Below, in pieces: positions 7,509 to 51,679 of a stretch of 64,000 bases of DNA (positions within the stretch are counted from its first letter, which is position 1; the number at the start of each line of letters is the position of its first letter). Source of the stretch: Botryllus schlosseri (Eukaryota); contig CM119380.1 in NCBI GenBank assembly GCA_051294905.1, forward strand, positions 2,604,001-2,668,000, read 5' to 3'. The notes under the pieces are model-generated. The model saw only the letters and a program-made list of their open reading frames with translations, was not told where the DNA came from and ran no database searches. The position numbers and the translations under genes were made by a program.

Positions 7509-10500
7509 GGGGGGAGGGTACTGCTAGACTCACAAAATTTTCAAATTGCGATATTTCATAACCAATTGATGCTGGATTCCTAAAAATTGGTGTGTGAGCT
7601 ATTTAGACTCAACTTCATATACTGCAAGAATTTCAGCATTTTACGATGACTCCTTGGGCCCAAATTGGGGGGGAGATTGGCGAATCGAACAAGTAGCACG
7701 GGAAAACGCCTGTCTCATCGATGGATGCTGAGAGATTCTAAGCAATGCTTTATAAAGTGTCCCGAGGCCTATAAGAACCTGCTGAAACGCTTGAAACTTC
7801 CGATATCAAAAAGAAAATTACGGAATATTCGTTTGGTGCTAGTGAGGTGCTGAATTTTCGATTTTTTTTCGTAAAATTCAGATTATAAGTAGCATAGTGC
7901 GTATACTAAATGTCAGGTAGCAAAAACAATAGTTTCAGCAGGTAGAGCAGTCCTACCGCTACTACTAACCCAAGTTTGATCAGGATTGAAGGTCTTTTGA
8001 TATAAAAATTTCTTGTCCTCGTGACCCCATATTACCAAAAACTAAAAATGAGAGAAAATCAACTTTGAAAATTGAAAAATATTTTGGTGAAAAAGTAGAG
8101 CAGGTATTTGAAATCTGTTGCCTTTAAATGTTGTAGGCATGCTTTAATGAGTATATAGCCAAATTTGAAGGAAATTGAATGATCCTAAATGCGAAATAAA
8201 AGATACAAATTTTGTGCGATTTGATGATTTTTCACTCAAAATTGCTATACCAAATTTGAAAATTTTCTAAATCCTAAATCAGACATCAGTTAGATGTTGT
8301 ATAGACGAAATAACATATTGTGAATACTGCAACATTGTCAATACCGATCGCATTTGGTACGAGGGAAGATATTACACCCACATTTACCTCCCGAGATCTT
8401 TCAAACAAGCAAATTTTCGGCATCAAATGTAATAAAAAAAAACGAAACAAACAATATCGAACGTTGCAACAGTGAGGAAAGAATCAATGATGCAGCACTA
8501 ATATAATCAAAATTTTCCTGCACTGTAAGTAGTGCCTTCGTGTCTCTCAGACTCTCTATCCTTGGATAAATCATCCAATCTTTTACGTTTCCGTTCCCGC
8601 GTTGTGTCAGCCTGAGTGTGAGATCGTTTAATTCTGATGGCATCGTCTCTAGATGCCGCATCTTTGACGCGGGGACTCATTGGAACTCCTGCAGAATTGC
8701 ACACATTGAACAAACCTTTTGCACCATTGTTCCATCGTATAACTGCAAGAGCCACCACAAATTCCATGTAGTCTTTACCAAAAAAAGATTCCTTGGAGCA
8801 TCGCTTCCATAATGTGCTGTGGAGGCACTCATTCGCATTTTGAGTTTGCAGTTTCATGCACCTAGAAAGCAAATCTAAACTTGCAAGATCTTGAAATACA
8901 GGTTTTACTGCTTGGAACATTTGAGGTGTCAGTGGATGGTACTTGCTTTTTGGTAGTGGTATCGGATCACTAGCTCCTTCCCGTTTAGCTTTTTTGTAAA
9001 AACACCACGCCTCATCACAATAACCATGAGTGGGTTTTTCCGGGGTTGAACAATTGTGCAACAGTATTGCCCAAACTTTTTTTGAGGCTTCTTTTGCATC
9101 GGGTGCACTATTCACAATGGCATTGTGGTAGTACTGACTCCACTTTTTTATTCTGGGAATACTCAATTTGCCGACCCCTCCCATTTTACGTTTTTTTAGT
9201 TTTTCCGTCTGTACGACCTTTGTTAATCTGGTGTACATTCTTTTATTGACGTGGTTGATGCACTCCTCCTTTACCACAGCGATGGACCTATAGGGTTTTG
9301 ATTCTTTCAGCATTGCCATCACTGAGGAATCTCCATCTGAAATCATTGTAGTGTAACGAAATCCTATTTCTGCAGAACGATGCCAAAGAATTTTGGCTAT
9401 ATCTCTCTCCGTGGCCCCCGATGATCCCTCGTGGTTTTTATAGCATACTGGCTGGTGTTCCTCTCTCCACTTTTTCAATGCTTCATCCTTGTACCTTTTT
9501 TCGTTGGTATCGCAAACACGCCAATATTTAGATTTTACTTCATAGTCGAGCACAAAACCTGTGCTCGGCTCTATGACGAAGCCGATGCCATATTTACTGA
9601 CATGCCCCCTTTTTTGCCAGGTTCCGTCATAGGACACACTGATATTGGTCAGGCCATTTTCATCACTTTGATCATATATATTTTTTACAGACTGTCTGGA
9701 TGAATCAATGGAATCTTTCAGAGTAGATTTGGTCCTGTTATAGATTAGAGCTGAAATTTTTTCGAATGATTTTTTGGAAATGCCCTTTTCAATACCCATC
9801 ATTTCTGTGAACGAATTCAGCTTAGCCAAGTGCATAGAATTTTGCAGAGCAGAGAACACAGCTCTTGTGTTTATTTGGTGATGGGAATGATTCTTACCGT
9901 CGAGTTCTACGATATCTTTCATTTCGGAGGTGTATTGTCGAAAAATTTCTTTTTTGCAGCATGATACTCCGATAATAATTTGAGTTGCAAATCCTTTATG
10001 CTGTATGCAGTTCCAATAGCCTTTGTCAGTTGAGCCACAGTCGGGGCAATTCACAATTTTTTGAACAACTGAATCAAAAAATGCAAAACTTGCGAGGAAA
10101 AACGTCTCTGCAGAATCTGAACCACCACTTCCAGATGTTGAGGGCGATAAAAGGTCCAATCTTTTCTCAAAAGATTTCTTAGGAACTACCGGTACTTTTC
10201 CGCGATTATAGCATTTTCTTTTCCTGTTGCCAAATGCCTTCTTAGTGGTTATCTTTGTCCTCATAATCAATACAACGATTAGCAATCAATAATCTACCAA
10301 TGCAATCTTGAAAATTTCCCAATATGATAAACAAAACACAGAAAATGGATAACTTTCACCTCTTCTCTTGTGAGCGAACAGCTGATCGCAATCCAGGAGT
10401 AGTAGGATTACAATGTTTTGAACGTCACGCTTAATCGATTACAGATATGGCTCTTCTACTCACTGTATGAAATGATGATTACTGATTGTTTACAGACAAT

Positions 10501-17039: not shown

Positions 17040-18174
17040 AATTTCCTGAGTGCCTCTCTGTCCGAAGTTACTTCATCTACGCTGCCTTCTAACACGCATT
17101 TTGTGAGCTTTTTTGGAGTGGTCACTTCCGTAGCCAGGGTCTCCATGTCCCCGGGCTTGCCTTCTTCCACCCATGCCTCGTATCTCCGAATCAATCGCTT
17201 GCCAAAGCGATCATTCGGATAATTTTCTTTACCGGGTATATACCAGTTGAAGAGAAGCCAGATATAACATTACTTTTTGACAGACCCAAACTCCAAATCT
17301 TTCCCAATTGGTCAGCGAAGTTTGCCCGCCTCACTTGTACCATGAATATTCACCCAGCTGTTTAGAACGTTCTCCCGGTGTTTTTTCAATGGTCCAAAAC
17401 ACGCTACGTCGAGCGGTTGCAGTACATCCGTCACGTGCGGTGGTAATTTGAGTAGGATTATATTTTCCTTCATGGCGCAATCGATCACTTTCAGTGATAC
17501 GTGGCTCAGATGGCCATCGAAAATCAACAAAAGTGGTCGTCGCTTCGCCACGTTCCTACTAAAATTTTCAAACCAGCCGGCAAATATCTCGCTGGTTACC
17601 CAGCAGTTGTCACTTACGGCATATTGCGTCCCTGGTAAAGCATCAGGACCGCGCCAGGTGCTTTGTAAATTTTTTCCGCTATATACGATGAGCGGGGGCA
17701 TGGCGGTGCTATCCGCACAACAGCAGGCCAATACCGTAGTGTTAAGGCGACCTGCGCCGCAAGTATTTTTATAGGCGACTTAACCCGATTCGTCGCAATT
17801 CCAAATTTGACTTGCCGACAACTTATTTTTATCCACAATCCTGCCCAGTGATTCATAAAAATCCAATATTATGAATGGATTGGAAGTAACTGATTTCCTT
17901 GCGGAACTTGGACCAGATCCAATAGCTCCGTGTGCTTAATGCTGAAACCAGCTTTGCAAAGAGTGTCGATGAAATTTGCCAGGCTTAGCTCCACGTCGCT
18001 GCTGAAAACTGGCTTTCGTCCTGGTTTTCGCCGCGGTAACTCGGAGCATTTTGCCATTCGGCTTCGCAACGTGCTAACGGCGATCCCGTATTTTCTTGCG
18101 ACTTCCCTTGCGCATTGTTCCTGGTGTGCCACTTCATTTAAAGCAAATTCCATATCCGACTCACTCCACTCCAT
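17040..18174 (-). pseudogene. pogo/Tigger-like (HTH_psq + CENP-B HTH + DDE_1) transposase, frameshifted
   Basis: AREVARKYGIAVSTLRSR, PGRKPVFS, IWNCDESG, LLIFDGHLSH, LPPHVTDVLQPLDVACFGPLK and ISGFSSTGIYP, spread over several frames. Confidence 0.85.
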
Positions 18175-18709: not shown

Positions 18710-19350
18710 TGCCCCAAGTTACTATATCAAAGTCGTGTGTCCGAATCCAATGGATTCAGAGCGTTGCCAAAGAACTTTGGCTATATCTCGCTCCATAGAC
18801 CCCGATGAACCCACATGATTTCTTCTATATGATGCTGGATCACGTTCCTCGCACTTTGTCAATTGTCCCTCATCTGTATACTTTTTTGATTGATAGTACA
18901 AACACGGCTATATTTTGTCTCTACTTTATAATCGAGAACAATTCCTGTGCTCGGTTCCATCACAAATCCAATTCCATACTTGTTAACATGTCCCCTTTTC
19001 TGCCATGTACCATCGTATGACACACTGATATCCGTCAAGGTCGTACTCTCAGTTGGATCGTAGATATTTTTCAGTGACAGCCGTCCTGAATTCAAGGAAT
19101 CCTTCAGAGATCTTTTTGTCTCATCAAATATTAGATTTGATTTTTTTCATGCGAATTCTTTCCAATCCCTTTCTCCACGCCCATCATTCAAGTGAATGAA
19201 TTCAGCTTACGAAGGTGCAACTGATTCTGCATTGCTGAGAACACTGGTGTTTATCTGGTGATGAGAATGCCTCATCCCCTTTTCCACGTTGTTATTGTCT
19301 GCAGAGGTGTGTAATGACGAAAAATTTCTTTGCTACAACACGATACTCCA
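18710..19350 (-). pseudogene. Second Kolobok-type transposase copy, middle part
   Basis: IGVSCCSKEIFRHYTS and DISVSYDGTWQKRGHVNKYGIGFVMEPSTGIVLDY; colinear with about 9340-9990. Confidence 0.85.
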
Positions 19351-20415
19351 ATGTTGCAACGAACAACACATTCATATTCGCAATTTATTCACTATAAGCT
19401 TTTCAACTGACCCTCATCGGTAGTGGCCGTCAGTATAATATGGAGATTGCAATTCGAAATGTAAAGATGAAATAGGTAGTGTAACGAAAGAATGGTATAA
19501 CAACAACAACGGGAGATTTGACAAAACGAGAGCGTTAAAGGTCAACTGCATCTTCAAAAAGACTTTGCATCTTCAAAAAGACTTTCCCTTATTTCGTACA
19601 TTATGTGGTTAGGAACATGGATAAAATAATAAAAATTGCGAATACTCAATAGTTTGGTCGTAATTTAATTTACAAATAGAAAAGCCATAAAACGGAAACG
19701 AAATCACTCAACCATGAAATGACGTCATGTAACTGACACGACAAGTCCTGGTAAACAGAAAGGTATACATTTTGGTCAGTTATAGGGATTGAGTATACAC
19801 TTTTTGCTGTGAATTTGGGTCTTTTAGCGTGGTCATGAAAGCTGTAAAGAAGATCAGCAGGCGTCGAGGTAGATGTCATGTAGCGTATGGTTGATACTCT
19901 CACACGTACTGCCGGTTCTCCAACAGGGGTTAAACCCGCTTAAACGCCAACACGCCAAACGCCACCCTGCGGCTGAGTCTCTACGTGGCGTCTGGCGTCT
20001 GAACGTGTTGAAACGCGGACTGGCGGCTGAATCGCTACATGGCGTCGGGCGTGTGAACGTGTTGAAACGCAGACTGGCGGCTGAATTGCTACATGGCGTC
20101 TGGCGTGTGAACGTGTTGTGACGCAGACTGGCGGATGAAGTGCTATATGGCGTCCAACATTTTAGGACGCTGTACTGCAACATGGCGTTCGGGAATTTTG
20201 TGACGCCGCGTTAGATATCGGAATTAATCATGAACTGAACCACAATTTCGTATTTCTTTCTAATTAGAGATATCATTCTATTGCCAGGATTTACGAAATC
20301 AGTAATCCTAATAATTAAAAACAACTGCATAGCTCCGGTTACCCCTGGCTAGTCTCTGCTGCCCCTCCTTACACTCGCATGGAGATGAACGAGTATTCAA
20401 GTAACTATATTCAAA

Positions 20416-21196
20416 TTATTCTGCAGTGAAACAAGCACAAGAAAAATGACCAGTTTGTAGCTGTTGCCCTGGGTAACAACAATCCTGGTATGTCCGCGGG
20501 TCCCAGCCGTCACATGCAACCTATAAAATACTTGGATCATTATACTGGACAAATCAACTTTTCAAATCCATACCCAATCCGTGATCATTGCATTTGACTT
20601 CTTCATTTATTGCAATAATTTGCCAATTCTCCGTCATCTGTACAGAAAATAGCTTGAAATTATTATTATTTTGCATGTGATATGGAGTAACATACCGGTC
20701 TCATCAAGTAGAAGTTGGCCATAGTACTTTCGGTACTCTTCACAAGCTCGTGCAGAATGATCGAACTGTAGATCTATATCAGGAATTGATGCCCCACTTG
20801 TGCAGTAGAGTTCAGCAGCCTAGTGAGAGTAGGGTACAAATCATTTATTTGATTCGAGCCATACTACATAATTATACATGAAAGTATCAAATACCTTCAA
20901 AGCAAGTACTCCACAATTATATCCATCTTTTTGTACATCAGTCCTGTCCAATTCAGTCCTTGGACTTGTCACAAACTTTCTTTTGGAGTACTTGCGTTGA
21001 AATTGGCTGAGTAAAATAGAAATGAGATACGACCCGTGAATAGCATCACACTAACTCACCGAAACTTCGTTAAAATATCCTTGTACCAGTGCTCCTGGCC
21101 TATTAAAATGTCAAACTCCGAATTGAGAGGGCAAAGGATACCCCTGAACTTAGTATTTCAAGGATACCCCTGAACTTAGTATTTCATCCACACATG
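20416..21196 (-). pseudogene. Spliced Ulp1/SENP-like (C48) protease C-terminal region plus PHD-like finger, decayed
   Basis: Exons 21196-21060, 21006-20895, 20819-20696, 20637-20574 and 20520-20416 joined by GT-AG introns give ...DVQKDGYNCGVLALK|AAELYC...LLLDET|DDGELANYCNK(frameshift)...TDW|VACDG...HFSCAC. The catalytic His motif is not recognisable. Confidence 0.65.
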
Positions 21197-21289
21197 CTGC
21201 AAATACAATTACAATTACTTTAAGAAGAAGAATTTCAAACTGAGTATTGGATAAATTGATATTTTGGCGTTTGCCATCTGCTGCAGTGG

Positions 21290-21770
21290 ATGTAACGGGG
21301 TGCATCTAACTTGTATATGTCGATGCGTGGCGTCGGGTATATCAGCTATGCAGCCGCCACGGGCTGCGTCTAATTTGTGCATGTCGATTGTCGCCGTTTC
21401 GAGTCTGTATGTATATCGTCTGTCCTCTATCGAGATTCCACAGGATGCATCTAATTTGTACATTCCGACGCTTTGCGTCTGGAATATCAACTATTCAGAA
21501 GCCACGGGGGCATCTAACTTGTATATGTCGACGCGTGGCGTCGGATATATCAGCTATGCAGCCGCCACGGGCTGCGTCTAATTTGTGCATGTCGATTGTC
21601 GCCGTTACGAGTCTGTATGTATATCGTCTATCCTCTTTCGAGATTCCATAGGATGCATCTAATTTCTACATTCCGACGCTTTGCGTCTGGTATATCAACT
21701 TGGCGTCGGACATATCAACTAGGCAGACGCCACGGGCTGCGTCTAATTTGTACGTGCTGACGTCTTGCGT
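21290..21770. repeat. 208-bp tandem repeat (~2.3 units) built from 60-80-bp subunits
   Basis: GCATCTAACTTGTATATGTCGA at 21302 and 21510; internal GC(A/G)TCTAA subunits. Confidence 0.85.
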
Positions 21771-21894
21771 CTGATGTAATCTACGTAACTACGTCGCTAG
21801 CCAGCTACGTCATGAGATTATGAATAAAAAGGCTAGTTCTACGAAGTGCGAAGGACGGTATGCAAGTAGGCTCTAAAGCAAAATCTCGACAAAC

Positions 21895-22079
21895 CTTGTA
21901 AATCTGGCCGGACGGTATGTTCTACAATCTACACGGTTAGCCCAGTGTACTACCTCAATATGATCATGTAGCTTTTGCACAGTTTCAAAACTGATGTCGC
22001 ATGGACTGCAACTATTTTCTTCAACTGTAACGATTTTGATAAGGTTCGTCAAGTCCTCAGCTAAAGTCATTTCTGCCAT
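21895..22079 (-). CDS. Putative first exon with a single C2H2 zinc finger
   Basis: MAEMTLAED...CSPCDISFETVQKLHDHIEVVH, ending at a GT donor (ACAAG|GTTTGT). Its link to the Ulp1 exons is inferred. Confidence 0.45.
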
Positions 22080-22459
22080 TGCTACGAGGAAACTCATCCA
22101 GTAACCAAACAAATAACTGTAGCAGCATAGTGTCGATCTCATTTCGCCAGACAGCATTGTTGCGTCACTATGTCACTCTGCAAAACAATTAAAAATTCGA
22201 GGCTTATTATGGGGGTTCCGGGGCAACGAACGAAATATAATTTATATTTTTGTAATCAGTGCAGCGTCAGCTTTCAATTGATACCCGTTTCATCAAATTG
22301 AATGGTCAGCAAGCCAGTCAAAAATCGCCGTCAATTTGCCTTTGACTAAATGTAACTAAAGTATGACGTAGACCGATTTCATTGAGCCGTGAGATTTACT
22401 TGTGTCGACGCCACTGAGCTATATAAACGGTCCGTGGACATATTAGCATGCGACACAAT

Positions 22460-22555
22460 AGCATGCTCATGTGTCCCCATGCTCATGTGTCCCTACGCTC
22501 ATGTGTTACCATGCTAATGTGTCCCCATGCTGTAGCGTCGCATGCTCAACTGTCG
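22460..22555. repeat. 16-bp minisatellite (CATGCTCATGTGTCCC)
   Basis: 4-5 degenerate tandem copies. Confidence 0.65.
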
Positions 22556-24038
22556 TTTTGCATTGTGTCGCATGCTCATATGTCGGGCAACCATATAAAC
22601 ACCATATAGGACACTATGGTACCAGACATTATTCCTCCATCGAGCAAGATAATATTGCAGCGATAAATCACTTTGATTCACCAGCACCCCCTTCCATCTC
22701 GATGAGTAACTTTGCCTATAAATCATATCCTATACACCGGACGCTATGCAACTGGCTATCTACACACGGCACAGCGTCTCGAAATTGCCAGACGCCGAAC
22801 GCCATGTCGCAGTACGGTGTCCTAAAATGTTGGACGCCAGTCGCCATATAGCACTTCATCCGCCAGTCTGTGTTTCAAGCCAATCACACTCCAGACGCCA
22901 TGGAGCAATTCAACCGCCAGTCTACGTTTCAACCACTGAGCTATATAAACCTGGCAATAGAATTATATCTCTAATTAGAAAGAAATACAAAATTGTGGTT
23001 CAGTTCATGATTCCGATATCTAACGCGGCGTCACAAAATTGCCGAACGCTATGTTGCAGTACAGCGTCCTAAAATGTTGGACGCCATATAGCACTTCATC
23101 CGCCAGTCTGCGTCACAACACGTTAACACGCCAGACGCCATGTAGCAATTCAGCCGCCAGTCTGCGTTTCAACACGTTCACACGCCAGACGCCATGTAGC
23201 GATCCAGCCGCCAGTCTGCGTTTCAACACGTTCAGACGCCAGACGCCAAGTAGAGACTCAGCCGCAGGGTGGTGTTTGGCGTGTGGCGGGTTGGCGTCTA
23301 GCGGGTTTAACTACAGAGACTGTAGGATGGAGTGACGACTGATTTAAATGCCTAATTAATATTCATCCGAAACATATTTTGTTTTCATGGTTTTGCAGCA
23401 ATTATCTTGTAAAAATGAATATTTATGGTATTATTGCCCATATTACTATAAATATTTTATATTATACTGGTATTAGTGCATTGATATACCGAAATATCTA
23501 TATAAGTTGAACTACTCTATTTACACTGCGCGCAATAATATTTTCAACTCCCTTTAGATCGGTCACGCTCCGCTTTGCGTAGGGAGCTACCCATTGTTAC
23601 GTATACCACTATTAATCCAACATGGAATTCAGACGGTGGAAAGTTGAATTTTTGTTGGTTTAATGCATGGTTGTCGATGGGAGTGGGTCGGAGTATTGGA
23701 GGATGAATACTTATAACGGACTCTGTTACTAATTGGACGTCCTAATATGTTTGGCCGGATTAGCGAATATCTTGGATACTTGCGTGACGGTCTTGCGTTT
23801 GTTGCCGTACGAAGCGATGAATATGCCGGTATATCGCTGAGCAATGCGCCCGGTCGGTGAATACCAGCGATGATTTATGATATAATAGCTATTATAGTGG
23901 CGTATTATATGATGATAGAAGATAACAATAAAAGGGCAGGCGATGAAAATGAAACGGAAAAACGGAAATAAAATTCCGAGTATTATGCTTTCACAGAAAT
24001 TTTGATTCCTTTATAACCGATACTTTTTCGTAAAAGTT

Positions 24039-24566
24039 ATGGCCGAAGAATCATTGTGGGAGGATTGGGAATCCATCACCGAGGAGGAAATTTCCCAATG
24101 CTTTGAAGGATTGGATGAGTGGAGTGGAATAAGTTGTGACGTCTGTGAAGCCATATTTCCCACTGTAAGGGAACTCAAGAAGCACGGGAAAGTGCATAAG
24201 CTCCCGTCACCAACTGAGCAAATTGACATCGACCGAGTAATCAACATTTTGAAGATTGCTTGCCGTAATTGTCATTCTATTTCCAGGTGTGGACCACGAT
24301 TTGAGGAATTGGATTTAAATCTTATTGTTCCACTTGTCAAACGCTTGAATGCTGCGTTCTGTGACGTTGGTACTGATGGTATTTATCAATACTACTCCAA
24401 CATTTGCCAGCAGGGAAGCAAACTTCTTGGACTGCAGCATCAGCTTCTTGCTGCATCTTTGCTCGTGAAGATTGTTGATGCACTTGTTCAAGCTGAGGAA
24501 AAAGTTTCCACTGCAAGAATGTCTGGTATCAATAGGAGGGAATGGTATAATATGCAATTCTGTTGA
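24039..24566 (+). CDS. 175-aa protein: acidic N-terminus, one C2H2 finger, helical remainder; probably a truncated transposon accessory protein
   Basis: ATG-started ORF; CDVCEAIFPTVRELKKHGKVH; lies inside the TTAA element. Confidence 0.6.
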   Translation: MAEESLWEDWESITEEEISQCFEGLDEWSGISCDVCEAIFPTVRELKKHGKVHKLPSPTEQIDIDRVINILKIACRNCHSISRCGPRFEELDLNLIVPLVKRLNAAFCDVGTDGIYQYYSNICQQGSKLLGLQHQLLAASLLVKIVDALVQAEEKVSTARMSGINRREWYNMQFC

Positions 24567-24604
24567 ATGTGTGGTGTTAATAATGAAATTTAACAGCATA
24601 CCAA

Positions 24605-25100
24605 TCAATATTCTAGTTCCGTGTGCCGACCTTCTATATGAATAAATATATCAATTGGAATCGTTTGGTGCATTGGTTTCTTGATCTGAGTGAGAGATAC
24701 CCCGCATACCTTTATGATTGTGCTACATCTTTCAGGCAAATTTAGCTTAGGCAGAGCTCCCACTTTGAGTTGCTTTCTGGTTTTGAGCTGAATGATATTG
24801 CTCTCCTCAAAATGATTTTCGCACATTGCGGCTCTATTATAAATTAAACTGTTAATTCTGTTGAAGTTGAGACAGCTGCTTTATTTACGTCTCCTTATGG
24901 AGCAACGTCTTGATACGATCTCCTTTTGAGGGGTCCCTGGTGGAAAGAAGGAGGCTGGCCATTGCTGCGTGCTGCTTCTGGGCCGCTTCATTCCTTAATA
25001 GCTCTGGTCTTCGTACCGTGAATAAGGATCTCTTACAAGATTGGTCACTACGCGGATTGTTCACATAGGTACATCCAGGGATGGCGCAGTTGTTGACCAT
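24605..25100 (-). CDS. Spliced THAP-domain gene (short or truncated)
   Basis: Exon 25100-24889 (MVNNCAIPGC...HKE), phase-2 GT-AG intron 24888-24834 (55 bp), then in-frame AAMCENHFEE...GALPKLNLP, completing the C2CH and AVP-like box. Confidence 0.75.
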
Positions 25101-25780
25101 AATTGCCGTGGCGGTTCTATTATTTTTACTGCTAAAGACGCGAAATGTGCAACTGGATATAAGACAATGCGATTTAGCCTAGTGAACAGAAAAGAAACAA
25201 GTACAGTCTTCCAATGTAACATAGGCCTAATGCCCGATGAAACAGTGTACGATATTGATCTTTTGAATGTATTGATAATCTTTTCGTCGCTATTTTTCAT
25301 CCGCTTTACGTGTAGGCTATTCGTTTTTTCATCGGTTGCTTATGCACAGAAAATAGTTTGGTATCGGTATCAGCGGCTTTCAACGGCCACTCAATTATTA
25401 CCGCATAAAGCCTTATCAATTATAGCATTGTCTACGTGTTTACGGGATTCGGCCGCGGAGAACTTGTCACTGATTAAGGCATTGCGGGAAATTAATTTTA
25501 AACGTGTTCTGGGTGGAGGACAGTTGTGAAATTTTTTTAGTGAGAACATATTGATGCTTCCTCGTAACATGCGAAATTTGAACCGTCTAGCCAGAATATT
25601 TCCACCCTTTTTCGGCACTCAAATTCGTCCATGCATTTCCGAAATCGCCTATACTTTTACATGTAAAATAGGACAATCGGACTTTCGCGAATGGAATTTT
25701 ACTACGCAAAGTCAAGCGTGACGGATCTAAACTTAGAACAATGGGTCGTCGCTCCATCCTACAGTCTCTATAGTTTAACC

Positions 25781-26981
25781 CAGTGTTGCCAATTTAGCGA
25801 TTTTCGCGCTAGATCTAGCGATTTTTCATCTGGTTTAGCGCCAAAAAATATGGATCTAGCGCTTAGCGATAAATCTAGCGATTTTTGAAAAAGTATTTGG
25901 CGATTTTTTAGCGCTTTTTTACCGAAAATAACCAATAAAGATCAGTTTTGGCTGACATAACTTCAAGTTGTGGAGCATTTCTTGCTCCATAAAAATACTT
26001 TCGGACGATTTGTCATAGTTGAGTGACTTTGGATAGTAGAGATACGCAACTCCTGGCGGTTACGCATGGGCAAACAGTGTATCTCTTCTTGCTGAGTAGC
26101 ATAATTGGCAGTGAAATTTAATATAATTGACCACGATCGAAAGATAGTTTTTCGCAGTGATTTCGAAAATACAAAATAAAGTCTTGTCCGGACAATGGAA
26201 CCATGCACCCCGAAACAGCCTTCAAAGTTTGAAAACCGGCGTTGCTCCAACAATGGCACCGCTGCAACACAATGAACATAACAATGACCAATTTCGTCCA
26301 GCGATTGTTCTGATTAATGCCGATTTTCAGGTCGTTCCATTGTCTTGACATGAATTTAATTCGTATTGTTGGAATCAGTGTGACACGAGCTTTCGTTTAG
26401 GACCAGAGTAATTACATTTCATACCCCGGGTTGGTCCTCAGATTTTTTTCATAATGTCTCTATACTTATAGTGGCTGGCAAACCCGGTTCATGTCGTGTT
26501 GTGTCGGGTCAAGTCGCATGTCGTGTGCACGTGTGTCAAGTCGCATGTCGTGTTCAAGTACTCCAACACAGTTTAGAAAAGAAGTCAAGAGCATTTCCGC
26601 GGTACATCGCATCACGTATTTACGAGCAAGGCGCGCGCTTATATAGTGAGCGGGTATGCCTGCACACCTGGTCATCAGTCACGTATAGCGATCATTGCGC
26701 AAAGCGATCTGCTTTATCGAAATGCACTGCACGTTTTGTCCCGCTTAGAGATGACTATTATTACTTATTTTGAACTAGAAATATGTTAAGTGACTTTGGT
26801 CCTAGACGAGTGAAATATAGCTGAGAAGAATGCATTGAAATAATGGTTCAATTTAACACCTTTAGCAATTAATGTAGATTTAGCGCTATTTTTTAGCGCT
26901 TTTTTTTCAATATTTAGCGATATCTAGCGATTTTTGACATCAGTTTTAGCGATTTTCTTCCATCCGGAGTTGGCAACACTG
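25781..26981. mobile_element. hAT-type non-autonomous element
   Basis: TIR CAGTGTTGCCAA / TTGGCAACACTG; perfect TSD GTTTAACC; TAGCGA subterminal repeats. Confidence 0.9.
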
Positions 26982-29359
26982 GTTTAACCCCGTCATATTC
27001 TTGCAACAAAGAAATTATGGAAAGAAGATGTCAGAGGAATGCTATAAACCTACTAAGTGTCTGGAATCGTTAAGTGGAAATGTATTGTGTCGGCCAGTAT
27101 TGTAAGAGTGTAACTAACCGTTTCTTCTTGTACTTATATTGTTTTCACTCGAGTACATGTAGAAACAATTATGCCTTGAAAAACTTATGAAGTATAAGTG
27201 TACTAGTCTGAAATAAATCCACTTCACTGATTGAAAAAGTAGGGGCTTTACTTACTGAAAATGGAGTCTATGACCACTGACCAGCCTACTTCAGAACGGT
27301 TACGTGGCTAACCAGCTTTTTATGGAAAAGGTATACTCTTAGTTTTGAAAATGAAATTCTGTTTGTTTAGTCGTATAAGTCATTTTATTTACTGAATGGG
27401 GAGTGTCAGATATCCCTGACTGAACACCTCTGGTAGTCATTACTAGCACTACATCGATTTAGGCTTTATCTTCGAAAACTAGGCTTTATCTTCGAAAACA
27501 AGTTTTCAAGGAAGAACAAAAGGTGGTACACGGAAGAGATACACGTTCTCAAACTCAAAATCATTCACTGATGAAGCTGTTTGAGCCGGAAAGCCTGCAT
27601 GTCATGTCGGCAGCAAAAGTTAAGAGGATAATATCGATGATCCATTAATATATCGTAATCTGTGTAGTTGTAGGCTTACCTCTCAATATGTTGACTTGTA
27701 GGCATACCTCTCAATATGTTGACATCTCAGTAGAGATGAAAAGGTACCGCTATCACCATAACAGTTTGAATGTTAGGTACTGTGTAATATTATGGCTGTT
27801 CAAAACAACCCTTATCAGATTTCATATGCATTTTTGTAGGATGCAGTTGGCAATCCTTCATTCTAATGAATCATTAAGATACAACATTTGGTACACTGCC
27901 TTCAATCTGACAACATTTGGTATACTGGCTTCAATCTGACTGTTACCAAAACTTTGTAATATACTTTTACCTGTTCTAGATTACTTCAATGAAAAAGTTG
28001 AAGCACTCATCAAAACAAGATCAGGGACGGCGGAGTTGCCCAATTCTATTAAGATTGTTCATCCTCATGCGACTACTGACGTCTTCAAAATTAGCTGGGA
28101 CAAAGCTATTGCCAAACACAAGACCTGATATATATTTCTCTCCCTGACACAGTAGTCAGTAGTGGTCCTGATGGATTAGTTATGTTGCATGTATTATTTT
28201 CAATAAAACTATTCATTCACAAGGAAGCATTGCAAAATTGAAATCTCTTCATCAAAGTATTGGATGAGAATTTTGATCAGATGGCGGTAACAACGCGCGC
28301 AGTAAGGATTCTTCGTTTCGTTGTTTTTACGTGGGATCCACAAGGCCAGCGAACAAAATTTCTCTACGCAGTGTTTCGCAGCTTCCTGAAAAGTGTAATT
28401 GTTGCGTTAGGAAATTATTTGGCAGCTCACTCGACGTTTCATTTGAATTAAACTCATTTACTCATGCATCGAATGAGGTGTAATAATTCTGTGGCCATAT
28501 TCCTGTTGATATCCACAGTAAGTCATGTCCAATGCATCAACATCAGGACACACTGATTGAAATGCTGTGATGCATTCTTCTGTCACTTACTCGGGGGGAC
28601 CTTCTTGCTGCATAAACTCTCCCTAATATTTATCATAAGCTGACAACCTCCATAGTCCATACTGACACCTGTAATTGATAATACCAAGATTCCTAACTGT
28701 AAAGAGGTGATGCACTAACTCACAAATACCACTATAGACAAGCGGCTTACGTTGAACAAGCTATAGGCTGATCATACTATTGATTACTAACCTTCTTCGG
28801 TTAGTAATGTATAATCACACGCAAAAGACCTATCGTTATACGAAGCTGCTAGGGGTTCCACTGATGTTAGATGGAGCGAATCAACACCAGAAACGCGTCT
28901 GCATTTCCACATTATTTTCGTAGGTAAGTGCAAAAGGTATACTTACATTCGACATCTGAGAACTCAGACTCATTTTCAATATCCCTTGACGAATCCGTTA
29001 CAAGCAAAACCTCCGCCATCAACTAAAATAATCGCCCTGCGATTGGGAGTACACAAACATCTGCGGTGGTGAGAAGAGATGTCATGTACCTGACGTCACA
29101 ATGCACATTCTGCTTTTTCGATAAACAACCCAATATTGAGACTTTCAGTCCAAATTACGGCCATTTCCGATTAGTTTGAAATACGTAAAGTCGGCAATTT
29201 CGGTATAAAAAATAATTCTGAACATGATTCCGCAAAGTTGTCTATGAAGATGCAGTTGACCTTTAAGCAAAAATGCAATTAGTGCAATACAAATAAGCTA
29301 TAATATATAGCCAGACACGCAACACTAATGAAATACACGGAGAGAATAGAGTCGGTCCA

Positions 29360-29645
29360 TATCTGCAGCAAAACCATTTTGCTGATTTATACTCCAATAG
29401 CCCGTGCCTGTTGAGCCACATTCCCGGCAAGTCACTATATTTTTTATCATACTATCAAAAAAAAACGCATGACTTGTCAGTAAAAAAGTCTCATCCGAGC
29501 CCCGACTTGCACTGGCATGTGAACCTGATGAAAGTTCCAATCTTTTTCTCAAAGGATCTTTTCGACTTCGAGGCTTTTTTTTGTCGTATTATTTTTTTCC
29601 TTCTGCCAAATGCCTGCCGTGTCGACATCTTCACTCCCACCATCA
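29360..29645 (-). pseudogene. Second Kolobok-type transposase copy, N-terminal part
   Basis: KRLELSSG...ETFLLTSHAFFFDSMIKNIVTCRECGSTGTGYW...GFA aligns to the N-terminus of ORF 8507-10285. Confidence 0.8.
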
Positions 29646-47352: not shown

Positions 47353-47467
47353 CCTGTGATATATATGGGATCTGAGCTATTTCAACATTTCCAAGAAGAG
47401 GTTGCAGTGCGACTAAGTTTTATTCGTGAGACGTACATACTTCAAGTGCGTGACTACCACACCCAAC

Positions 47468-50400
47468 ATGTCCGAAGAACTCGTTAACGTTCTTAAGGAA
47501 CAGTTAGAACAGCAGCGTAAAGAGATGGACGAGCAGAGGGCACATAACGAACAGCAGATGAAAGCATGGATGGAGACACTGCGTCAAATATCTTGTCAGG
47601 CGGTCTCCACTGCGCCGGTCAGCAATGTGTTAGTTCAGCCATTTGCGCCATTTGACTCGACAATAGAACTCTGGACCGATTATTGGGAACGCTTCAGTAC
47701 ATTCGTGAGCGCACACTCCGTGCCGAATGATAAAGTGGCCCATGTATTCCTTACGAATCAAAGTCCAGTGGTCTACAAGATGTTGCAGAACATAGCTGCG
47801 CAGCAGGCCGATCCTAAGAAGATTAATGATCTTTCCATTGAAGAAATTAACGCTTTTATGAAAGAGCACTATGATCCGAAGCAATTTGTGATTAGAGAAC
47901 GCTACAAATTTTGGAGTGACATGAAGCGCAAACCTGGTGAAACCATACCACAATTAGCTGCTCGTATCAGGCAAGACGCGATCACATGTGACTTTTCTTC
48001 AATTAAAAATCCGTTGGACGAAGCGATGTCCACGCGATTTATGTGTTCGGCGGGAAATGAAGCTGTTCTAAAGGCAGTATTTAAACTGAAAAGCGATTCT
48101 TTGAACTTCGAGACTGTTGTCAAAACAGCAACTGATACGGAAGATGCCGCCAAGGTAGCAAAAGAAACCGTTTATGGTGCAAAATCCGAAAACCCGTTTC
48201 AAACTAACGTGGTTAAGTCTTCTTATACAAAGAAAAGTAAAGGAGACGCCCAGAACTCCAAGAGTCGAGTTGCTGGATATGAAGGGGAAGGAAGAAACCT
48301 CTCTGAAAAGGCGTGTTTTCGATGTGACAAGTGCGGACACTCTCCTGATGAATGTAAATATGTAGATGCTGTCTGTCATTACTGCGACAAAAGAGGTCAC
48401 ATTCAACCAGCATGTCGTATCAAAAAGAAAGATAGGTTGACGGAGAAATGTGTTCGTAAGAACCGTCGCGTTAGAAGTGTTAAACATACACGATCGTATC
48501 CAGAAATCGAAATCGACGTGTATATCAATGAAGACATCCAGTCATTTGAGTTGGATACTGGCGCGAGAGAAAATTTCATGTCCAAAGACAGATGGATCGC
48601 TCTGGGAAGACCTGCTTTGCTAAAGGTGAATGCTGAGTTCGAATCTGCATCCTTGCATAAACTGAACACTCTAGGTACATTCACACCTAAGAATGTTTCA
48701 CTGACAGATGTGAACAATCGGTCAGAAATATCCGATTTCTCATTTATAGTTACCGATATACCGAATTTGAACTTGATAGGCCGTAGTGGAATATTGAAGT
48801 TAGGAATTTCAATCGATGCTCTGCTATACGGTAACAGTGTTGTAAAATCACTTTCCAATGTTGATTTTTCGGAATTGGCCAAACGCTGCGAGGATATCAG
48901 TAACGAATTCCCAGAACTTTTCAAATCTGAATTGGGTTGTTTAAAGGATGTTAAGCTAGACATTCGATTTAAAAATGATGCGAAACCTATTTTCTGTAAA
49001 TATCGCCCAGTACCGTTTGCTATCCGTGATGAGTTATCCCAAGCGTATGATGTAGGGATAGCCAAAGGTGTGTGGCAACCTGTCGATTTTAATGATTATG
49101 GTACGCCTGTTGTTCCAATTCGTAAACGATCGCTTCCTGGTAGTAAATCGGGAAAGATTCGTGTGTGCGGCGATTATTCTGTTACAGTTAATTCGCAACT
49201 TGAAACGCATAGACAACCTATTCCACTCGCGGAAGAGCTCATGCAGAAATTGGGCGGTGGATATGGTTTTACGAAGATTGACTTGGCTGATGCCTATAAC
49301 CAAGTTCAACTGAGTGAAGAGAGTCAAAAGAGACTTGCTCTCAGCACACATCGTGGGGTCTTGCTGCAAATGAGGTTACCGTTCGGAATCTCTTCAGCAC
49401 CAGGTTATTTCACTGAAATCATGAATCAGCTGACTGCCGACTTGAAAGGTGTAGCTGTTTACCTGGATGACATTTTGGTCAGCGGCGTCGACGCCGCCGA
49501 TCACATGAATAATCTCCGTGCGTTATTGAAGAGACTTCAAGACAAAGGTCTCCGATGCCGAAGAGAAAAGTGCACATTCGCACAACCGTCAGTCGAATAC
49601 CTAGGTCACAAATTATCAAGTGCCGGTATTTCCAAAGGTTCGAAAGTGGAGGCAGTGTTGAAAATGCCTGCTCCATCTAACGTTTCTGGTCTCAAATCAT
49701 TTCTGGGCCAAGTACAATTCTACAGTAAATTTTTACCCAATCTGTCAGCGGTGACGGAACCGTTACACCGTCTTACAAGAAAGGGAATCCCGTGGTTTTG
49801 GGGTAAAGATGCGCAAGATTCATTCGAAGAATTGAAGAAAATGCTATGTGCAGATTTGCTCCTGGTTCACTTTGATCCAACAAAGAAGTTAGGATTATCA
49901 TGTGACGCTTCGGAAGTAGGAATTGGTTGCGTACTTTTTCACCGTTCTGAAGATGGTTCTGAGAAGCCAATTTCCTACATGTCCAAAACGTTGACGGAAA
50001 CTCAACGAAAGTATAGCCAGATTCACAAAGAAGCTTTGGCTATCATTTTTGCTCTCCAGAAGTATCATCAATACTTGTATGGAAGAAAGTTTATATTGGT
50101 TACTGACCATAAACCTCTACTGGCATTGTTTGGACCAAGCAAAGCGATACCGGCCCTCGCAGCAAATCGTCTGGCAAGATGGGCACTGACTTTGAACCAA
50201 TACGATTATGATATTGAATATCGTAATACAAAGCAACACGGTAATGCTGATGCATTGAGTCGACTCCCGTTCAGTCATGACTCCGTATTTGATAAAGGGG
50301 AGGAAGAGGACAATATGAACATTGTTAGCACAGTACGTACTGTGAGCCAACAGATTAATCCTTCTGATCCTGGTATATTGGCAAAAGAATCCAGCAAAGA

Positions 50401-51679
50401 TCCTGTCATTTCTGCTGTGATGAGATACACCAGAGTGGGCTGGCCAGAAAATGTTGTCAGCACCAAAGATCAAGGATATTCGGTTGAAGATTTTCGTAAG
50501 ATATCCACATGTTTATCTGTTGAAAACGGATGTTTGTTTTCTGGAGCGAGAATCGTAATTCCCTCGAGTCTGCAAAGAAAGGTGTTGGATATTCTTCATT
50601 TGGGACATTTTGGAATGCAACGTATGAAGCAACTTGCTCGTAGTGCTGTGTATTGGCCGCGAATGGACAATGATATTGTGGACACGTGTCACAGATGTGT
50701 TTCATGCTGCGAAAATCAGAACGCTCCTAAGAAGGCAAGCATCCATCCTTGGATGTTACCTGAGAAGCCGTGGATGAGAGTTCATGTCGACCATGCAATC
50801 GAATTCATGGGAACCAATTGGCTCGTATTGACGGACTCGTATTCTAAATATCCTTGCATCCACCCGACCAATTCCGTTTCAAGCAAGGAAACGATCGGAT
50901 TACTTGAACAGGACTTTGCACATTTTGGATATCCGTTTACCATTGTGTCTGACAATGCAAGTACGTTCAAGTCTGAAGAGTTTCAGAAATGGTGTAAAGA
51001 AAGAGGAATTATCCACCTTTCAGGTGCACCGTATCACCCATCTACGAATGGCGCCGCAGAAAAGCTGGTCGACTCATTCAAACGCGCACTACGCAAATCA
51101 AGTTTGCCGGCTAAGGCCGCATTACAGGAATTCCTCATGTTGTACAGGAGAACGCCGCTTGCAAGTGGATTATCTCCGAGTCAGCTTCTCAATGGCAGAC
51201 AAATTCGAACAATGATTGATACGCTACTGCCATCTCCAGCTCATGCAGCTCAAGGCAAGCAAGTGAGAGAAGTTGAGAAGCAAGTAAAGGCTTCAGTCAA
51301 TCGATTCACGGTTGGCACACCTTGTTATGCTCTGTATTATGGGCCGAAGAAGAATAAAAAGCCCAAATGGGTACCTGCGACAGTTACCAAGGTATTTGGT
51401 TCTCGCAGCGTCAATGTTATGGTTCATCCGCGTGGTCCTACGTGGAGAAGACACATTGATCAACTTCGACCAAGGTATGGAATTGAAGAAGACAGCGAGC
51501 CTGGCATCACACCTGATGTACCTGCTTTTAATTATCGAAGGGTAGTAAGCCCTCCGAGAAACAATATCGTGGCAATGCGTCATGCCTCTCCCGAAGTCCA
51601 TGAATTACCGGAATATGGACCTCATAACCCGAGACGTTCGAAACGAACTCGTAAACCGAGAGTTATTCTTGATTTGTAA
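47468..51679 (+). CDS. Gag-Pol polyprotein (1403 aa from the first ATG): Gag, 2 CCHC knuckles, protease, RT, RNase H, integrase
   Basis: CFRCDKCGHSPDEC, CHYCDKRGHIQPAC, LDTGA, YLDDIL, CDASEVG, HLGH...CVSC, HVDHA...SDNA...GAAE; PR-RT-RH-IN order. Confidence 0.97.
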   Translation: MSEELVNVLKEQLEQQRKEMDEQRAHNEQQMKAWMETLRQISCQAVSTAPVSNVLVQPFAPFDSTIELWTDYWERFSTFVSAHSVPNDKVAHVFLTNQSPVVYKMLQNIAAQQADPKKINDLSIEEINAFMKEHYDPKQFVIRERYKFWSDMKRKPGETIPQLAARIRQDAITCDFSSIKNPLDEAMSTRFMCSAGNEAVLKAVFKLKSDSLNFETVVKTATDTEDAAKVAKETVYGAKSENPFQTNVVKSSYTKKSKGDAQNSKSRVAGYEGEGRNLSEKACFRCDKCGHSPDECKYVDAVCHYCDKRGHIQPACRIKKKDRLTEKCVRKNRRVRSVKHTRSYPEIEIDVYINEDIQSFELDTGARENFMSKDRWIALGRPALLKVNAEFESASLHKLNTLGTFTPKNVSLTDVNNRSEISDFSFIVTDIPNLNLIGRSGILKLGISIDALLYGNSVVKSLSNVDFSELAKRCEDISNEFPELFKSELGCLKDVKLDIRFKNDAKPIFCKYRPVPFAIRDELSQAYDVGIAKGVWQPVDFNDYGTPVVPIRKRSLPGSKSGKIRVCGDYSVTVNSQLETHRQPIPLAEELMQKLGGGYGFTKIDLADAYNQVQLSEESQKRLALSTHRGVLLQMRLPFGISSAPGYFTEIMNQLTADLKGVAVYLDDILVSGVDAADHMNNLRALLKRLQDKGLRCRREKCTFAQPSVEYLGHKLSSAGISKGSKVEAVLKMPAPSNVSGLKSFLGQVQFYSKFLPNLSAVTEPLHRLTRKGIPWFWGKDAQDSFEELKKMLCADLLLVHFDPTKKLGLSCDASEVGIGCVLFHRSEDGSEKPISYMSKTLTETQRKYSQIHKEALAIIFALQKYHQYLYGRKFILVTDHKPLLALFGPSKAIPALAANRLARWALTLNQYDYDIEYRNTKQHGNADALSRLPFSHDSVFDKGEEEDNMNIVSTVRTVSQQINPSDPGILAKESSKDPVISAVMRYTRVGWPENVVSTKDQGYSVEDFRKISTCLSVENGCLFSGARIVIPSSLQRKVLDILHLGHFGMQRMKQLARSAVYWPRMDNDIVDTCHRCVSCCENQNAPKKASIHPWMLPEKPWMRVHVDHAIEFMGTNWLVLTDSYSKYPCIHPTNSVSSKETIGLLEQDFAHFGYPFTIVSDNASTFKSEEFQKWCKERGIIHLSGAPYHPSTNGAAEKLVDSFKRALRKSSLPAKAALQEFLMLYRRTPLASGLSPSQLLNGRQIRTMIDTLLPSPAHAAQGKQVREVEKQVKASVNRFTVGTPCYALYYGPKKNKKPKWVPATVTKVFGSRSVNVMVHPRGPTWRRHIDQLRPRYGIEEDSEPGITPDVPAFNYRRVVSPPRNNIVAMRHASPEVHELPEYGPHNPRRSKRTRKPRVILDL

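What the first reader, a model, noticed from the sequence alone, without database searches (positions are those of the whole stretch)
20416..22079. Cryptic spliced Ulp1-like protease + PHD (+C2H2) gene inside a foldback transposon
Seen: four GT-AG introns (53, 75, 58 and 53 bp) join exons reading KFR|QFQRK...QKDGYNCGVLALK|AAELYC...RKYYGQLLLDET|D...YCNK...TDW|VACDG...FSCAC. The first three junctions keep frame. Lesions are a 26-bp tandem duplication (21130-21185) and a 1-bp loss in the PHD. An upstream C2H2 exon lies on the same strand. Known: QxDxxxCG is the catalytic Cys motif of C48 SUMO proteases, and TE-borne Ulp1 and PHD domains occur in MULE-type elements and relatives, but those make ~9-bp TSDs; this one is flanked by TTAA (or TA). 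Inference: a possibly undescribed DNA-transposon lineage carrying a chromatin-reading deSUMOylase, a plausible counter to SUMO-dependent silencing. The gene is invisible in the ORF track. This is my best candidate for novelty in the window.
Basis: partly seen in the sequence, partly recalled or inferred. Interest (0 to 1): 0.8.

Follow-up and report, generated by a model that had tools for sequence, protein, structure and literature searches.

The report
Dead Ulp1-like relic in TTAA foldback transposon
A 3.4-kb jumping gene with long inverted arms, inserted at a TTAA site in a sea-squirt genome, carries the broken, intron-containing tail of a SUMO-protease-like gene of the sort many DNA transposons carry; it is dead, has no transposase of its own, and is a modest curiosity, not a demonstrated new transposon lineage.

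Summary
The sequence facts hold. They are four GT-AG introns of 53, 75, 58 and 53 bp, the stated exon peptides, an exact 26-bp tandem duplication, a 1-nt frameshift, an upstream C2H2-like ORF, 360-bp inverted arms built of 54-bp subrepeats, and TTAA on both sides.

The protease label is probable, not proven. Pfam gives Peptidase_C48 only at noise level (E 0.13). A protein-language-model search placed 71 of its 100 nearest clusters in the set whose listed clusters carry PF02902. The Gln/Cys motif occurs once in the window. No catalytic His or Asp was found. No tool supports the PHD label.

A 9-bp MULE-type duplication is excluded, because the right flank is the end of a neighbouring element. 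Three elements sit in tandem, separated by TTAA, inside a Kolobok-like element.

The element has no transposase relic, no second copy in the window and no relatives in any collection searched. It is a dead non-autonomous element.

Whether the Ulp1 tail is its own lineage's gene or second-hand remains open. Ulp1(+PHD) tails are already known in Mutator and Ginger1 transposases. Earlier scan notes (not re-tested) report intact foldback/NOF and KDZ elements with Ulp1-PHD elsewhere in this genome, but not this TTAA-flanked family.

The parts
19930..19933 (.). TTAA, left target-site copy
   Evidence: Arm identity stops here
19934..20291 (+). Left inverted arm (starts ACCCGC), with 3.4 copies of a 54-bp subrepeat at 19969-20154
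   Evidence: 95-97% identical to the right arm
20416..20520 (-). Exon E: Cys-rich tail (VACDGW...FSCAC) plus stop codon; degenerate PHD-like second half
   Evidence: no Pfam or Atlas support
20521..20573 (-). Intron 4, 53 bp, GTATGG..TAG
   Evidence: 28% GC
20574..20637 (-). Exon D, with an internal 1-nt frame change (DDGELANYCNK, then ..KKSNAMITDW)
20638..20695 (-). Intron 3, 58 bp, GTATGT..CAG, phase 1
   Evidence: 28% GC
20696..20819 (-). Exon C (AAELYC...GQLLLDET): expected C-terminal helices of a C48 domain
   Evidence: no family hit when searched alone
20820..20894 (-). Intron 2, 75 bp, GTATTT..TAG; holds two in-frame stops
20895..21006 (-). Exon B with the Gln/Cys motif VQKDGYNCGVL; also holds a 21-nt inverted repeat (20896-20916 / 20981-21001)
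   Evidence: Pfam PF02902 E 0.13; Atlas 71/100 hits in the Peptidase_C48 set; motif unique in window; inverted repeat
21007..21059 (-). Intron 1, 53 bp, GTGAGT..CAG
21060..21157 (-). Exon A (..RGILCPLNSEFD..ILTKFR); upstream limit uncertain; Cys where the catalytic Asp would be expected
21134..21185 (.). Exact 26-bp tandem duplication (frameshift); TGA at 21186-21184 just upstream in the reading direction
21295..21780 (.). Internal minisatellite (208-bp unit x1.9 plus related 56-63-bp units) carrying the arm motif TGGCGTC
21873..22157 (-). 94-aa ATG-started ORF with one C2H2-like finger (possible first exon)
   Evidence: Pfam zf-C2H2_4 E 0.02
22437..22584 (.). 23-nt inverted repeat (96%) around a 16-bp x4.4 microsatellite
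22794..22933 (.). Extra partial inner copy of the right arm
   Evidence: families D1, D6; pairs I4, I5, I9
22947..23307 (-). Right inverted arm (ends GCGGGT), with 54-bp subrepeats at 23080-23265
23308..23311 (.). TTAA, right target-site copy, shared with the left flank of the next element

Best explanation
This is a dead, non-autonomous cut-and-paste DNA transposon of 3,374 bp (19934-23307) with foldback-like architecture. It has 360-bp inverted arms made of 54-bp subrepeats rich in TGGCGTC. It inserted at a TTAA.

It encodes no transposase, so it could move only in trans. The inferred driver is a TTAA-specific transposase of piggyBac or Kolobok type that binds the repeated arm motif.

Its interior holds a 5'-truncated, multiply broken, four-intron remnant of the C-terminal tail of a transposon-type gene. 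That tail is the second half of a Ulp1/C48 cysteine-protease domain followed by a degenerate Cys-rich, PHD-like end. An isolated C2H2-like first exon lies on the same strand.

The relic makes no working protein.

Its origin is unresolved. About 45%: the fragment is second-hand, from one of the Ulp1-PHD-bearing transposase genes (Mutator/NOF/Rehavkus or KDZ type) that scan notes report in this genome. About 35%: it is the vestige of this family's own autonomous ancestor after an internal deletion.

Shown: anatomy, introns, lesions, TTAA flanks and absence of a transposase. Inferred: C48 ancestry, PHD ancestry, trans-mobilisation and the binding role of the motif.
For: Anatomy and arms.

TTAA at both ends, and reconstruction of a single GGGG-TTAA-CCCC empty site after removing three tandem elements each bounded by TTAA.

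The right flank CTACAGAGA... is the terminal repeat of the neighbouring element, whose mate lies at 25740-25772. It therefore cannot be a 9-bp duplication.

Introns and exons.

C48: PF02902 is the only Pfam hit of the exon-B piece (E 0.13, profile 133-189 of 217). The Atlas feature search placed 71 of 100 hits in the set whose two listed clusters carry PF02902 in 16-37% of members; top scores are 0.95, with 189-199 shared features and recognition 2850. The Gln/Cys motif is unique in the window.

Lesions.

No transposase family in any of 74 stop-free pieces of the interior.

TGGCGTC/GACGCCA occurs 18 times in the element against 0.14 expected from the rest of the window.

Literature: Ulp1 and Ulp1+PHD C-terminal domains in Ginger1 and Mutator transposases (PMC2836005); C48 in Cryptons (PMC3212892); TTAA targeting and internal tandem repeats in Kolobok T2-MITEs (PMC6004289).
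Against: The Pfam C48 hit is at noise level. Among 74 pieces of the interior, 15 unrelated families score E 0.015-0.24.

Pfam and the Atlas may both lean on the same short motif. Exons A and C, and the PHD piece, give no family signal on their own.

Catalytic His and Asp were not found.

TTAA is a palindrome, so with a single copy and no empty site it could formally be part of the terminal repeat. The termini fit neither the piggyBac CCC...GGG rule exactly (here ACCC...GGGT) nor the Kolobok AG/RR rule.

No second copy or relative was found anywhere, so mobility as a family is inferred from structure alone.
Confidence: 0.62

Rival explanations
1. The relic is the vestige of an autonomous, so far undescribed TTAA-inserting DNA-transposon lineage. 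Its own gene would run C2H2 finger, transposase, Ulp1 protease, PHD finger, and this copy would have lost the transposase core by internal deletion.
For: The layout fits an internally deleted autonomous element. An ATG-started C2H2 exon lies near one arm (22157). The stop codon is only 125 bp from the other arm (20416 against 20291). Both are on the same strand, with a minisatellite at the presumed deletion site. TTAA flanks exclude MULE, Zisupton and Ginger1 target sites (PMC6446971, PMC12730594, PMC2836005). Accessory chromatin-enzyme genes are known to have spread among many DNA-transposon superfamilies, for example TET/JBP in fungi (PMC12730594).
Against: There is no transposase trace in the interior. 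No other copy or relative was found. The relic is heavily decayed and 5'-truncated. Ulp1-PHD donors are reported as common in this genome (scan notes, untested here), so a second-hand fragment is at least as likely.
Confidence: 0.3
2. It is an ordinary deleted member of the Foldback/NOF/Rehavkus branch of Mutator, which carries Ulp1-PHD in this genome. Its 9-bp duplication would be obscured.
For: It has foldback arms with tandem subrepeats, an internal minisatellite and a Ulp1 plus PHD-like tail. These match the features listed for Rehavkus (PMC6446971) and the scan notes s1-300845, s1-234232 and s1-286523.
Against: No 8-10-bp direct repeat exists at any boundary parse. The 6/9 resemblance of CAACAGGGG to CTACAGAGA is explained by the neighbour's terminal repeat. 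No such repeat follows the two downstream elements either. No Mutator-type domain is present in the interior. The PF20700 Mutator fragments nearby lie outside the arms, and relatives of that family carry no C48 domain.
Confidence: 0.06
3. The protease resemblance is chance. The interior would be non-coding filler in which short open stretches, GT/AG dinucleotides and a Cys-Gly motif happen to line up.
For: The Pfam hit is indistinguishable from noise. The bare motif turns up in about 8% of simulated windows. Full-library phmmer of the exon-B piece found only spurious repeat proteins. PDB and NCBIfam gave nothing. Part of exon B is a 21-nt inverted repeat, which could have created some of the reading.
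Against: The Atlas result is strong by its own calibration: score 0.95, 189-199 shared features, 71 of 100 hits in one family set. It names the same family as the only Pfam hit out of 24,736 models. Four consecutive breaks in the reading frame each coincide with a strong donor, a pyrimidine-rich YAG acceptor and a 53-75-bp spacing; three of the four gaps are AT-rich. Residues outside the inverted-repeat arm (Q, D, G and N before the Cys) also fit the C48 motif.
Confidence: 0.12

Closest known systems
Foldback/NOF/Rehavkus elements (Mutator superfamily)
   Same: Long inverted arms built of tandem subrepeats, an internal minisatellite and a PHD-type tail (PMC6446971). According to scan notes for this genome, these elements also carry a Ulp1 domain.
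   Different: They make 9-bp duplications; this element is flanked by TTAA. No Mutator-type transposase trace is present. The minisatellite lies upstream of the protease relic, not before the 3' arm.
Ginger1 transposons with a Ulp1 or Ulp1+PHD C-terminal domain (e.g. Ginger1-9_HM)
   Same: The Ulp1-then-PHD order at the C-terminus of a spliced transposon gene, and a 4-bp target duplication (PMC2836005).
   Different: Ginger1 targets CCGG/CCGT and has TGTNR termini and an integrase-like transposase. None of these is seen here.
Non-autonomous TTAA-targeting elements: piggyBac-like MITEs and Kolobok T2-MITEs
   Same: TTAA flanks. Internal tandem-repeat expansion is known in Kolobok MITEs (PMC6004289). 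The element sits in a nest with a CCC...-ended piggyBac-like MITE and an AGG...-ended Kolobok-like element.
   Different: The termini read ACCC...GGGT, which is neither canonical CCC/GGG nor AG/RR. No paper in the searched library links Ulp1 with Kolobok, and the two piggyBac+Ulp1 hits that were opened do not place Ulp1 in piggyBac elements.
Zisupton / KDZ transposons
   Same: From my own knowledge, Zisupton transposases carry a SUMO-protease domain. A scan note reports a KDZ-Ulp1-PHD element 735 kb away in this genome.
   Different: Zisupton makes 8-bp duplications (PMC12730594). No KDZ-type domain was found here.
Plant KI-MULEs / ULP-like gene fragments carried by transposons (Hoen et al. 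2006, cited in PMC2836005)
   Same: A mobile element that carries a Ulp-like gene or fragment without a transposase.
   Different: Those are plant Mutator elements with 9-bp duplications. The relic here is decayed and intron-bearing, in an animal TTAA element.

Membership tests
Peptidase_C48 (Ulp1/SENP) | Pfam PF02902 match at or above the gathering score (20.7 bits) | tested here: not met
   12.5 bits, E 0.13, for the exon-B piece only, which is noise level among 74 pieces. The spliced product could not be submitted because it has no reference.
Peptidase_C48 (Ulp1/SENP) | Oxyanion Gln and catalytic Cys in the Q-x-[DN]-x-x-[DN]-C-G context | tested here: met
   VQKDGYNCGVL in exon B. It is the only such motif in the window. 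Atlas: 71 of 100 hits fall in the set whose listed clusters carry PF02902.
Peptidase_C48 (Ulp1/SENP) | Catalytic His and Asp upstream of the Cys | tested here: not met
   No HW or Asp motif in any frame upstream. The expected Asp position reads Cys (ILCPLNS). The region is cut by a TGA, the 26-bp duplication and then a minisatellite.
PHD finger | C4-H-C3 zinc ligands with canonical spacing, and a Pfam PHD match | tested here: not met
   Four to five of eight ligands. Trp sits at ligand 4, Gln at the His position, and the last pair is C-x-C, with one frameshift. No Pfam or Atlas support.
Mutator / Rehavkus / NOF | 8-11-bp (Rehavkus: 9-bp) target-site duplication | tested here: not met
   No direct repeat of 8-10 bp at any boundary parse. 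The right flank is the neighbour's terminal repeat.
Mutator / Rehavkus / NOF | Mutator-type DDE transposase, or a remnant of one | tested here: not met
   No transposase family among 74 interior pieces at E up to 1.
Foldback-type architecture | Long terminal inverted repeats composed of tandem subrepeats | tested here: met
   Arms of about 360 bp, 95-97% identical, each with 3.4 copies of a 54-bp unit.
piggyBac superfamily (non-autonomous) | TTAA target duplication | tested here: met
   TTAA directly abuts both arm ends. The nest collapses to one TTAA. This rests on a single copy; no empty site was available.
piggyBac superfamily (non-autonomous) | CCC...GGG termini and a cognate DDE_Tnp_1_7 transposase | tested here: inconclusive
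   Termini are ACCC...GGGT, one base off. No transposase in the element. The rest of the genome is not searchable here.
Kolobok superfamily (non-autonomous) | TTAA duplication with AG/RR termini (PMC6004289) | tested here: not met
   TTAA is met, but the terminus is AC, not AG/RR. The enclosing 9.7-kb element does start AGGTCAAC.

The most novel reading that the evidence does not exclude
The element is a decayed member of a TTAA-inserting foldback family whose autonomous copies encode a C2H2-transposase-Ulp1-PHD protein. This would extend the Ulp1-PHD accessory module from Mutator, Ginger1, Zisupton and Crypton to a piggyBac- or Kolobok-type (or unclassified) superfamily. It would also show that the module has been passed repeatedly between transposon superfamilies within one genome.
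Probability: 0.28. Interest if true: 0.5.

Novelty: new member of a known kind. Interest (0 to 1): 0.3.

Why it matters
Ulp1/SUMO-protease tails recur on unrelated DNA transposases and their function has never been tested. If the same module also belongs to a TTAA-inserting family, that would argue it is a transferable accessory that helps transposition or escape from silencing.

This copy cannot answer that question. It is dead, truncated and unique in the data available. Its practical value is as a marker sequence, using the arms and the TGGCGTC motif, for finding intact relatives in the full genome.

Tried and rejected
- Full-library phmmer with the 69-aa exon-B piece gave four hits. All are repetitive bacterial or low-complexity proteins without C48, so they are spurious.
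- Word-indexed protein search with the exon-B piece and with the C2H2 ORF found no candidates.
- The same search with the neighbouring 592-aa Mutator-like ORF, done to reach multi-domain relatives with Ulp1, returned PF20700 only among the 120 best hits listed. None carried C48 or PHD, and the best identity was 40%.
- PDB sequence search and NCBIfam gave nothing.
- Exact-protein look-up of the C2H2 ORF found nothing on record.
- Metagenome scans with the exon-B piece and with a 27-nt arm pattern found no relatives.
- blastn and tblastx of the element, its interior and the three neighbouring elements against the rest of the window found no other copy and no empty site.
- The scan's own index, queried by sequence, was blank.
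- A link between the element's C2H2 ORF and the C2H2 ORF of the next element shows only generic finger similarity.
- The 9-bp duplication CAACAGGGG / CTACAGAGA was rejected.
- I left out one step. The spliced exons were not sent to Pfam, HHpred or structure prediction, because a spliced sequence has no reference and I did not type it.

Full report
**Observation**

| Intron | Coordinates | Length | Ends |
|---|---|---|---|
| 1 | 21059-21007 | 53 bp | GTGAGT..CAG |
| 2 | 20894-20820 | 75 bp | GTATTT..TAG |
| 3 | 20695-20638 | 58 bp | GTATGT..CAG |
| 4 | 20573-20521 | 53 bp | GTATGG..TAG |

- The introns join the stated peptides.
- Three of the four introns are 28-31% GC, against 36-49% for the exons. 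All acceptors are preceded by pyrimidine-rich tracts.
- The exact 26-bp tandem duplication is at 21134-21185.
- Exon D needs a 1-nt frame change.
- A 94-aa ATG-started ORF with one C-x2-C-x12-H-x4-H pattern lies upstream on the same strand, at 21873-22157.
- The largest plain ORF across the relic is about 50 aa, so the gene is indeed invisible in an ORF list.

**The element**

- Two arms, 19934-20291 and 22947-23307, are 95-97% identical in inverted orientation. Each holds 3.4 copies of a 54-bp unit.
- A partial extra arm copy lies at 22794-22933.
- The heptamer TGGCGTC/GACGCCA occurs 18 times in the element against 0.14 expected from the rest of the window. It lies in both arms and in an internal 208-bp minisatellite at 21295-21780. 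I read it as a candidate transposase-binding motif, which is inference.

**Target site**

- Arm identity ends at TTAA on both sides: GGGG-TTAA-ACCCGC... and ...GCGGGT-TTAA-CTACAG.
- The bases right of the element, CTACAGAGACTGTAGG..., are the terminal repeat of a second element. Its mate lies at 25740-25772.
- That second element is followed, after (T)TTAA, by a third, 1.2-kb element with piggyBac-like ends (CCCAGTGTTGCCAA), itself followed by TTAA.
- Removing all three leaves GGGG-TTAA-CCCC.
- The trio lies inside a 9.7-kb element with perfect 18-bp ends, TTAA-AGGTCAACTGCATCTTCA, at 19535-19556 and 29245-29266. Its AGG terminus and TTAA flanks fit Kolobok (PMC6004289).
- Fragments of a PF20700 Mutator-like gene lie on both sides of that outer element.
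- A 9-bp MULE-type duplication is therefore excluded for the foldback element. The 6/9 match of CAACAGGGG to CTACAGAGA belongs to the neighbour, and no such repeat follows the downstream elements.
- Caveat: TTAA is palindromic, and I have one copy and no empty site.

**Is it a Ulp1 protease relic?**

For:
- Peptidase_C48 is the only Pfam hit of the stop-free piece that holds exon B (E 0.13, 12.5 bits, profile 133-189 of 217).
- The ESM Atlas feature search of the same piece placed 71 of its 100 nearest clusters in one family set. The two listed clusters of that set carry PF02902 in 37% and 16% of members. Top scores are 0.95, with 189-199 shared features and recognition 2850. The tool's own calibration says such values are rare for shuffled sequences.
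- The motif Q.[DN]..[DN]CG occurs only here in the six-frame translation of the window. It appears in about 8% of simulated windows, and its extension by two hydrophobic residues in 0 of 60.

Against:
- When all 74 stop-free pieces of the interior are scanned, 15 unrelated families score E 0.015-0.24. The Pfam hit alone is therefore noise.
- Exons A and C give nothing alone.
- Full-library phmmer, PDB and NCBIfam gave nothing real.

By eye, the order of segments fits a C48 domain from the Asp strand to the C-terminus. The segments run ..ILCPLNS.., a basic helix, the Gln/Cys motif, then ..LKAAELY.. and ..DLQFDHS..YRKYYGQLLL. That judgement rests on my recollection of SENP/Ulp1 sequences and is a lead only.

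The catalytic His and Asp are not recognisable. The expected Asp reads Cys. A TGA at 21186-21184 precedes exon A even with one duplication copy removed. Upstream, the sequence runs into the minisatellite.

I put C48 ancestry at about 85-88%.

**PHD**

- The last two exons give a D-W-V-x-C-D-G-W ... C-C ... C-x-C pattern, with at most five of eight ligands in place and one frameshift.
- Neither Pfam nor the Atlas supports it.
- It is plausible only because Ulp1 followed by PHD is a known transposon tail (PMC2836005, Fig. 1e legend and Table 1).

**What the element lacks**

- No transposase family appears in any frame of the interior.
- No similarity links the interior to anything else in the window.
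- No other copy of it or of its neighbours exists in the window.
- No relative was found in the protein collections, the exact-protein index or the metagenome contigs.
- The nearby intact 592-aa Mutator-like ORF belongs to PF20700. Its 120 best listed relatives carry no C48 or PHD.

**Explanation**

- The element is a non-autonomous, TTAA-inserting foldback-like transposon. It carries a dead, 5'-truncated tail of a transposon-type Ulp1 (+PHD-like) gene.
- It could move only in trans.
- The protease relic does nothing now.

Two origins remain open.
- Own lineage, about 35%. The layout suits an internally deleted autonomous ancestor: a start exon near one arm, a stop codon 125 bp from the other arm, both on one strand, and a minisatellite between them.
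- Second-hand fragment, about 45%. Scan notes report that Ulp1-PHD-bearing foldback/NOF and KDZ elements are common in this sea-squirt genome. I did not test those notes. No transposase trace is present in this element.

**Comparison with known systems**

| System | Target site / duplication | Source |
|---|---|---|
| Rehavkus/MULE | 9 bp | PMC6446971 |
| Ginger1 | CCGG | PMC2836005 |
| Zisupton | 8 bp | PMC12730594 |
| This element | TTAA | |

- The known Ulp1(+PHD) carriers in the table therefore differ from this element in target site.
- TTAA-type superfamilies (piggyBac, Kolobok) share the target site. No paper in the searched library links Ulp1 with Kolobok. The two piggyBac+Ulp1 hits I opened mention Ulp1 only for Polinton-type and Crypton elements.
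- Spread of an accessory chromatin-enzyme gene across many transposon superfamilies has a precedent in fungal TET/JBP genes (PMC12730594).

**Verdict**

The protease ancestry is probable. The PHD label is unproven. The 'new lineage with a deSUMOylase' idea is not demonstrated.

The scan has already described Ulp1-PHD foldback and KDZ transposons elsewhere in this genome, but not this TTAA-flanked family.

Interest is modest. The decisive tests are a whole-genome copy census and a Pfam or fold test of the spliced product, and neither could be run here.

Noticed in passing
window 19535-29266: A 9.7-kb element with perfect 18-bp inverted ends (AGGTCAACTGCATCTTCA) flanked by TTAA, Kolobok-like by its terminus. 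It encloses the foldback element and two further elements. PF20700 Mutator-like gene fragments lie on both sides of it (18725-19352 and 29235-29579, minus strand).
   Followed up: partly
window 23308-26987: Three unrelated elements sit head to tail, separated only by TTAA or TTTAA. They are the foldback element; a 2.46-kb element (23312-25772, ends CTACAGAGACTGTAGG) with a spliced THAP-like gene and a C2H2 ORF; and a 1.2-kb piggyBac-like MITE (25779-26983, ends CCCAGTGTTGCCAA). This looks like repeated insertion into the TTAA copies left by earlier insertions. The middle element has TTTAA on both sides.
   Followed up: partly
window 20896-20916 / 20981-21001: A 21-nt inverted repeat (19/21 complementary, 64-nt loop) lies inside exon B. 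Its two arms encode FQRKYSK and CGVLALK. Only two short-range inverted repeats of 90% or better exist in the whole 64-kb window, and both lie in this element. It may be a template-switch (quasi-palindrome) lesion in a decaying gene.
   Followed up: partly
window 22437-22584: A 23-nt inverted repeat (96% complementary) brackets a 16-bp x4.4 microsatellite inside the foldback element. No flanking duplication is visible.
   Followed up: no
window 8510-10285 (minus strand): An intact 592-aa Mutator-like transposase ORF (PF20700, E 2e-47). Its best public relatives are only 34-40% identical, from arthropods, molluscs and unnamed assemblies, and none carries C48 or PHD.
   Followed up: partly
window 17315-18174 (minus strand): A pogo/Tigger-type relic: a DDE_1 domain ORF (17315-17731, E 2e-24) preceded by a helix-turn-helix-like ORF (17869-18174).
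   Followed up: no
window 47426-51679 and 58637-61402 (plus strand): A 1417-aa LTR-retrotransposon pol ORF (RT, RNase H, integrase) and a 921-aa LINE ORF (endonuclease plus RT), both apparently intact.
   Followed up: no
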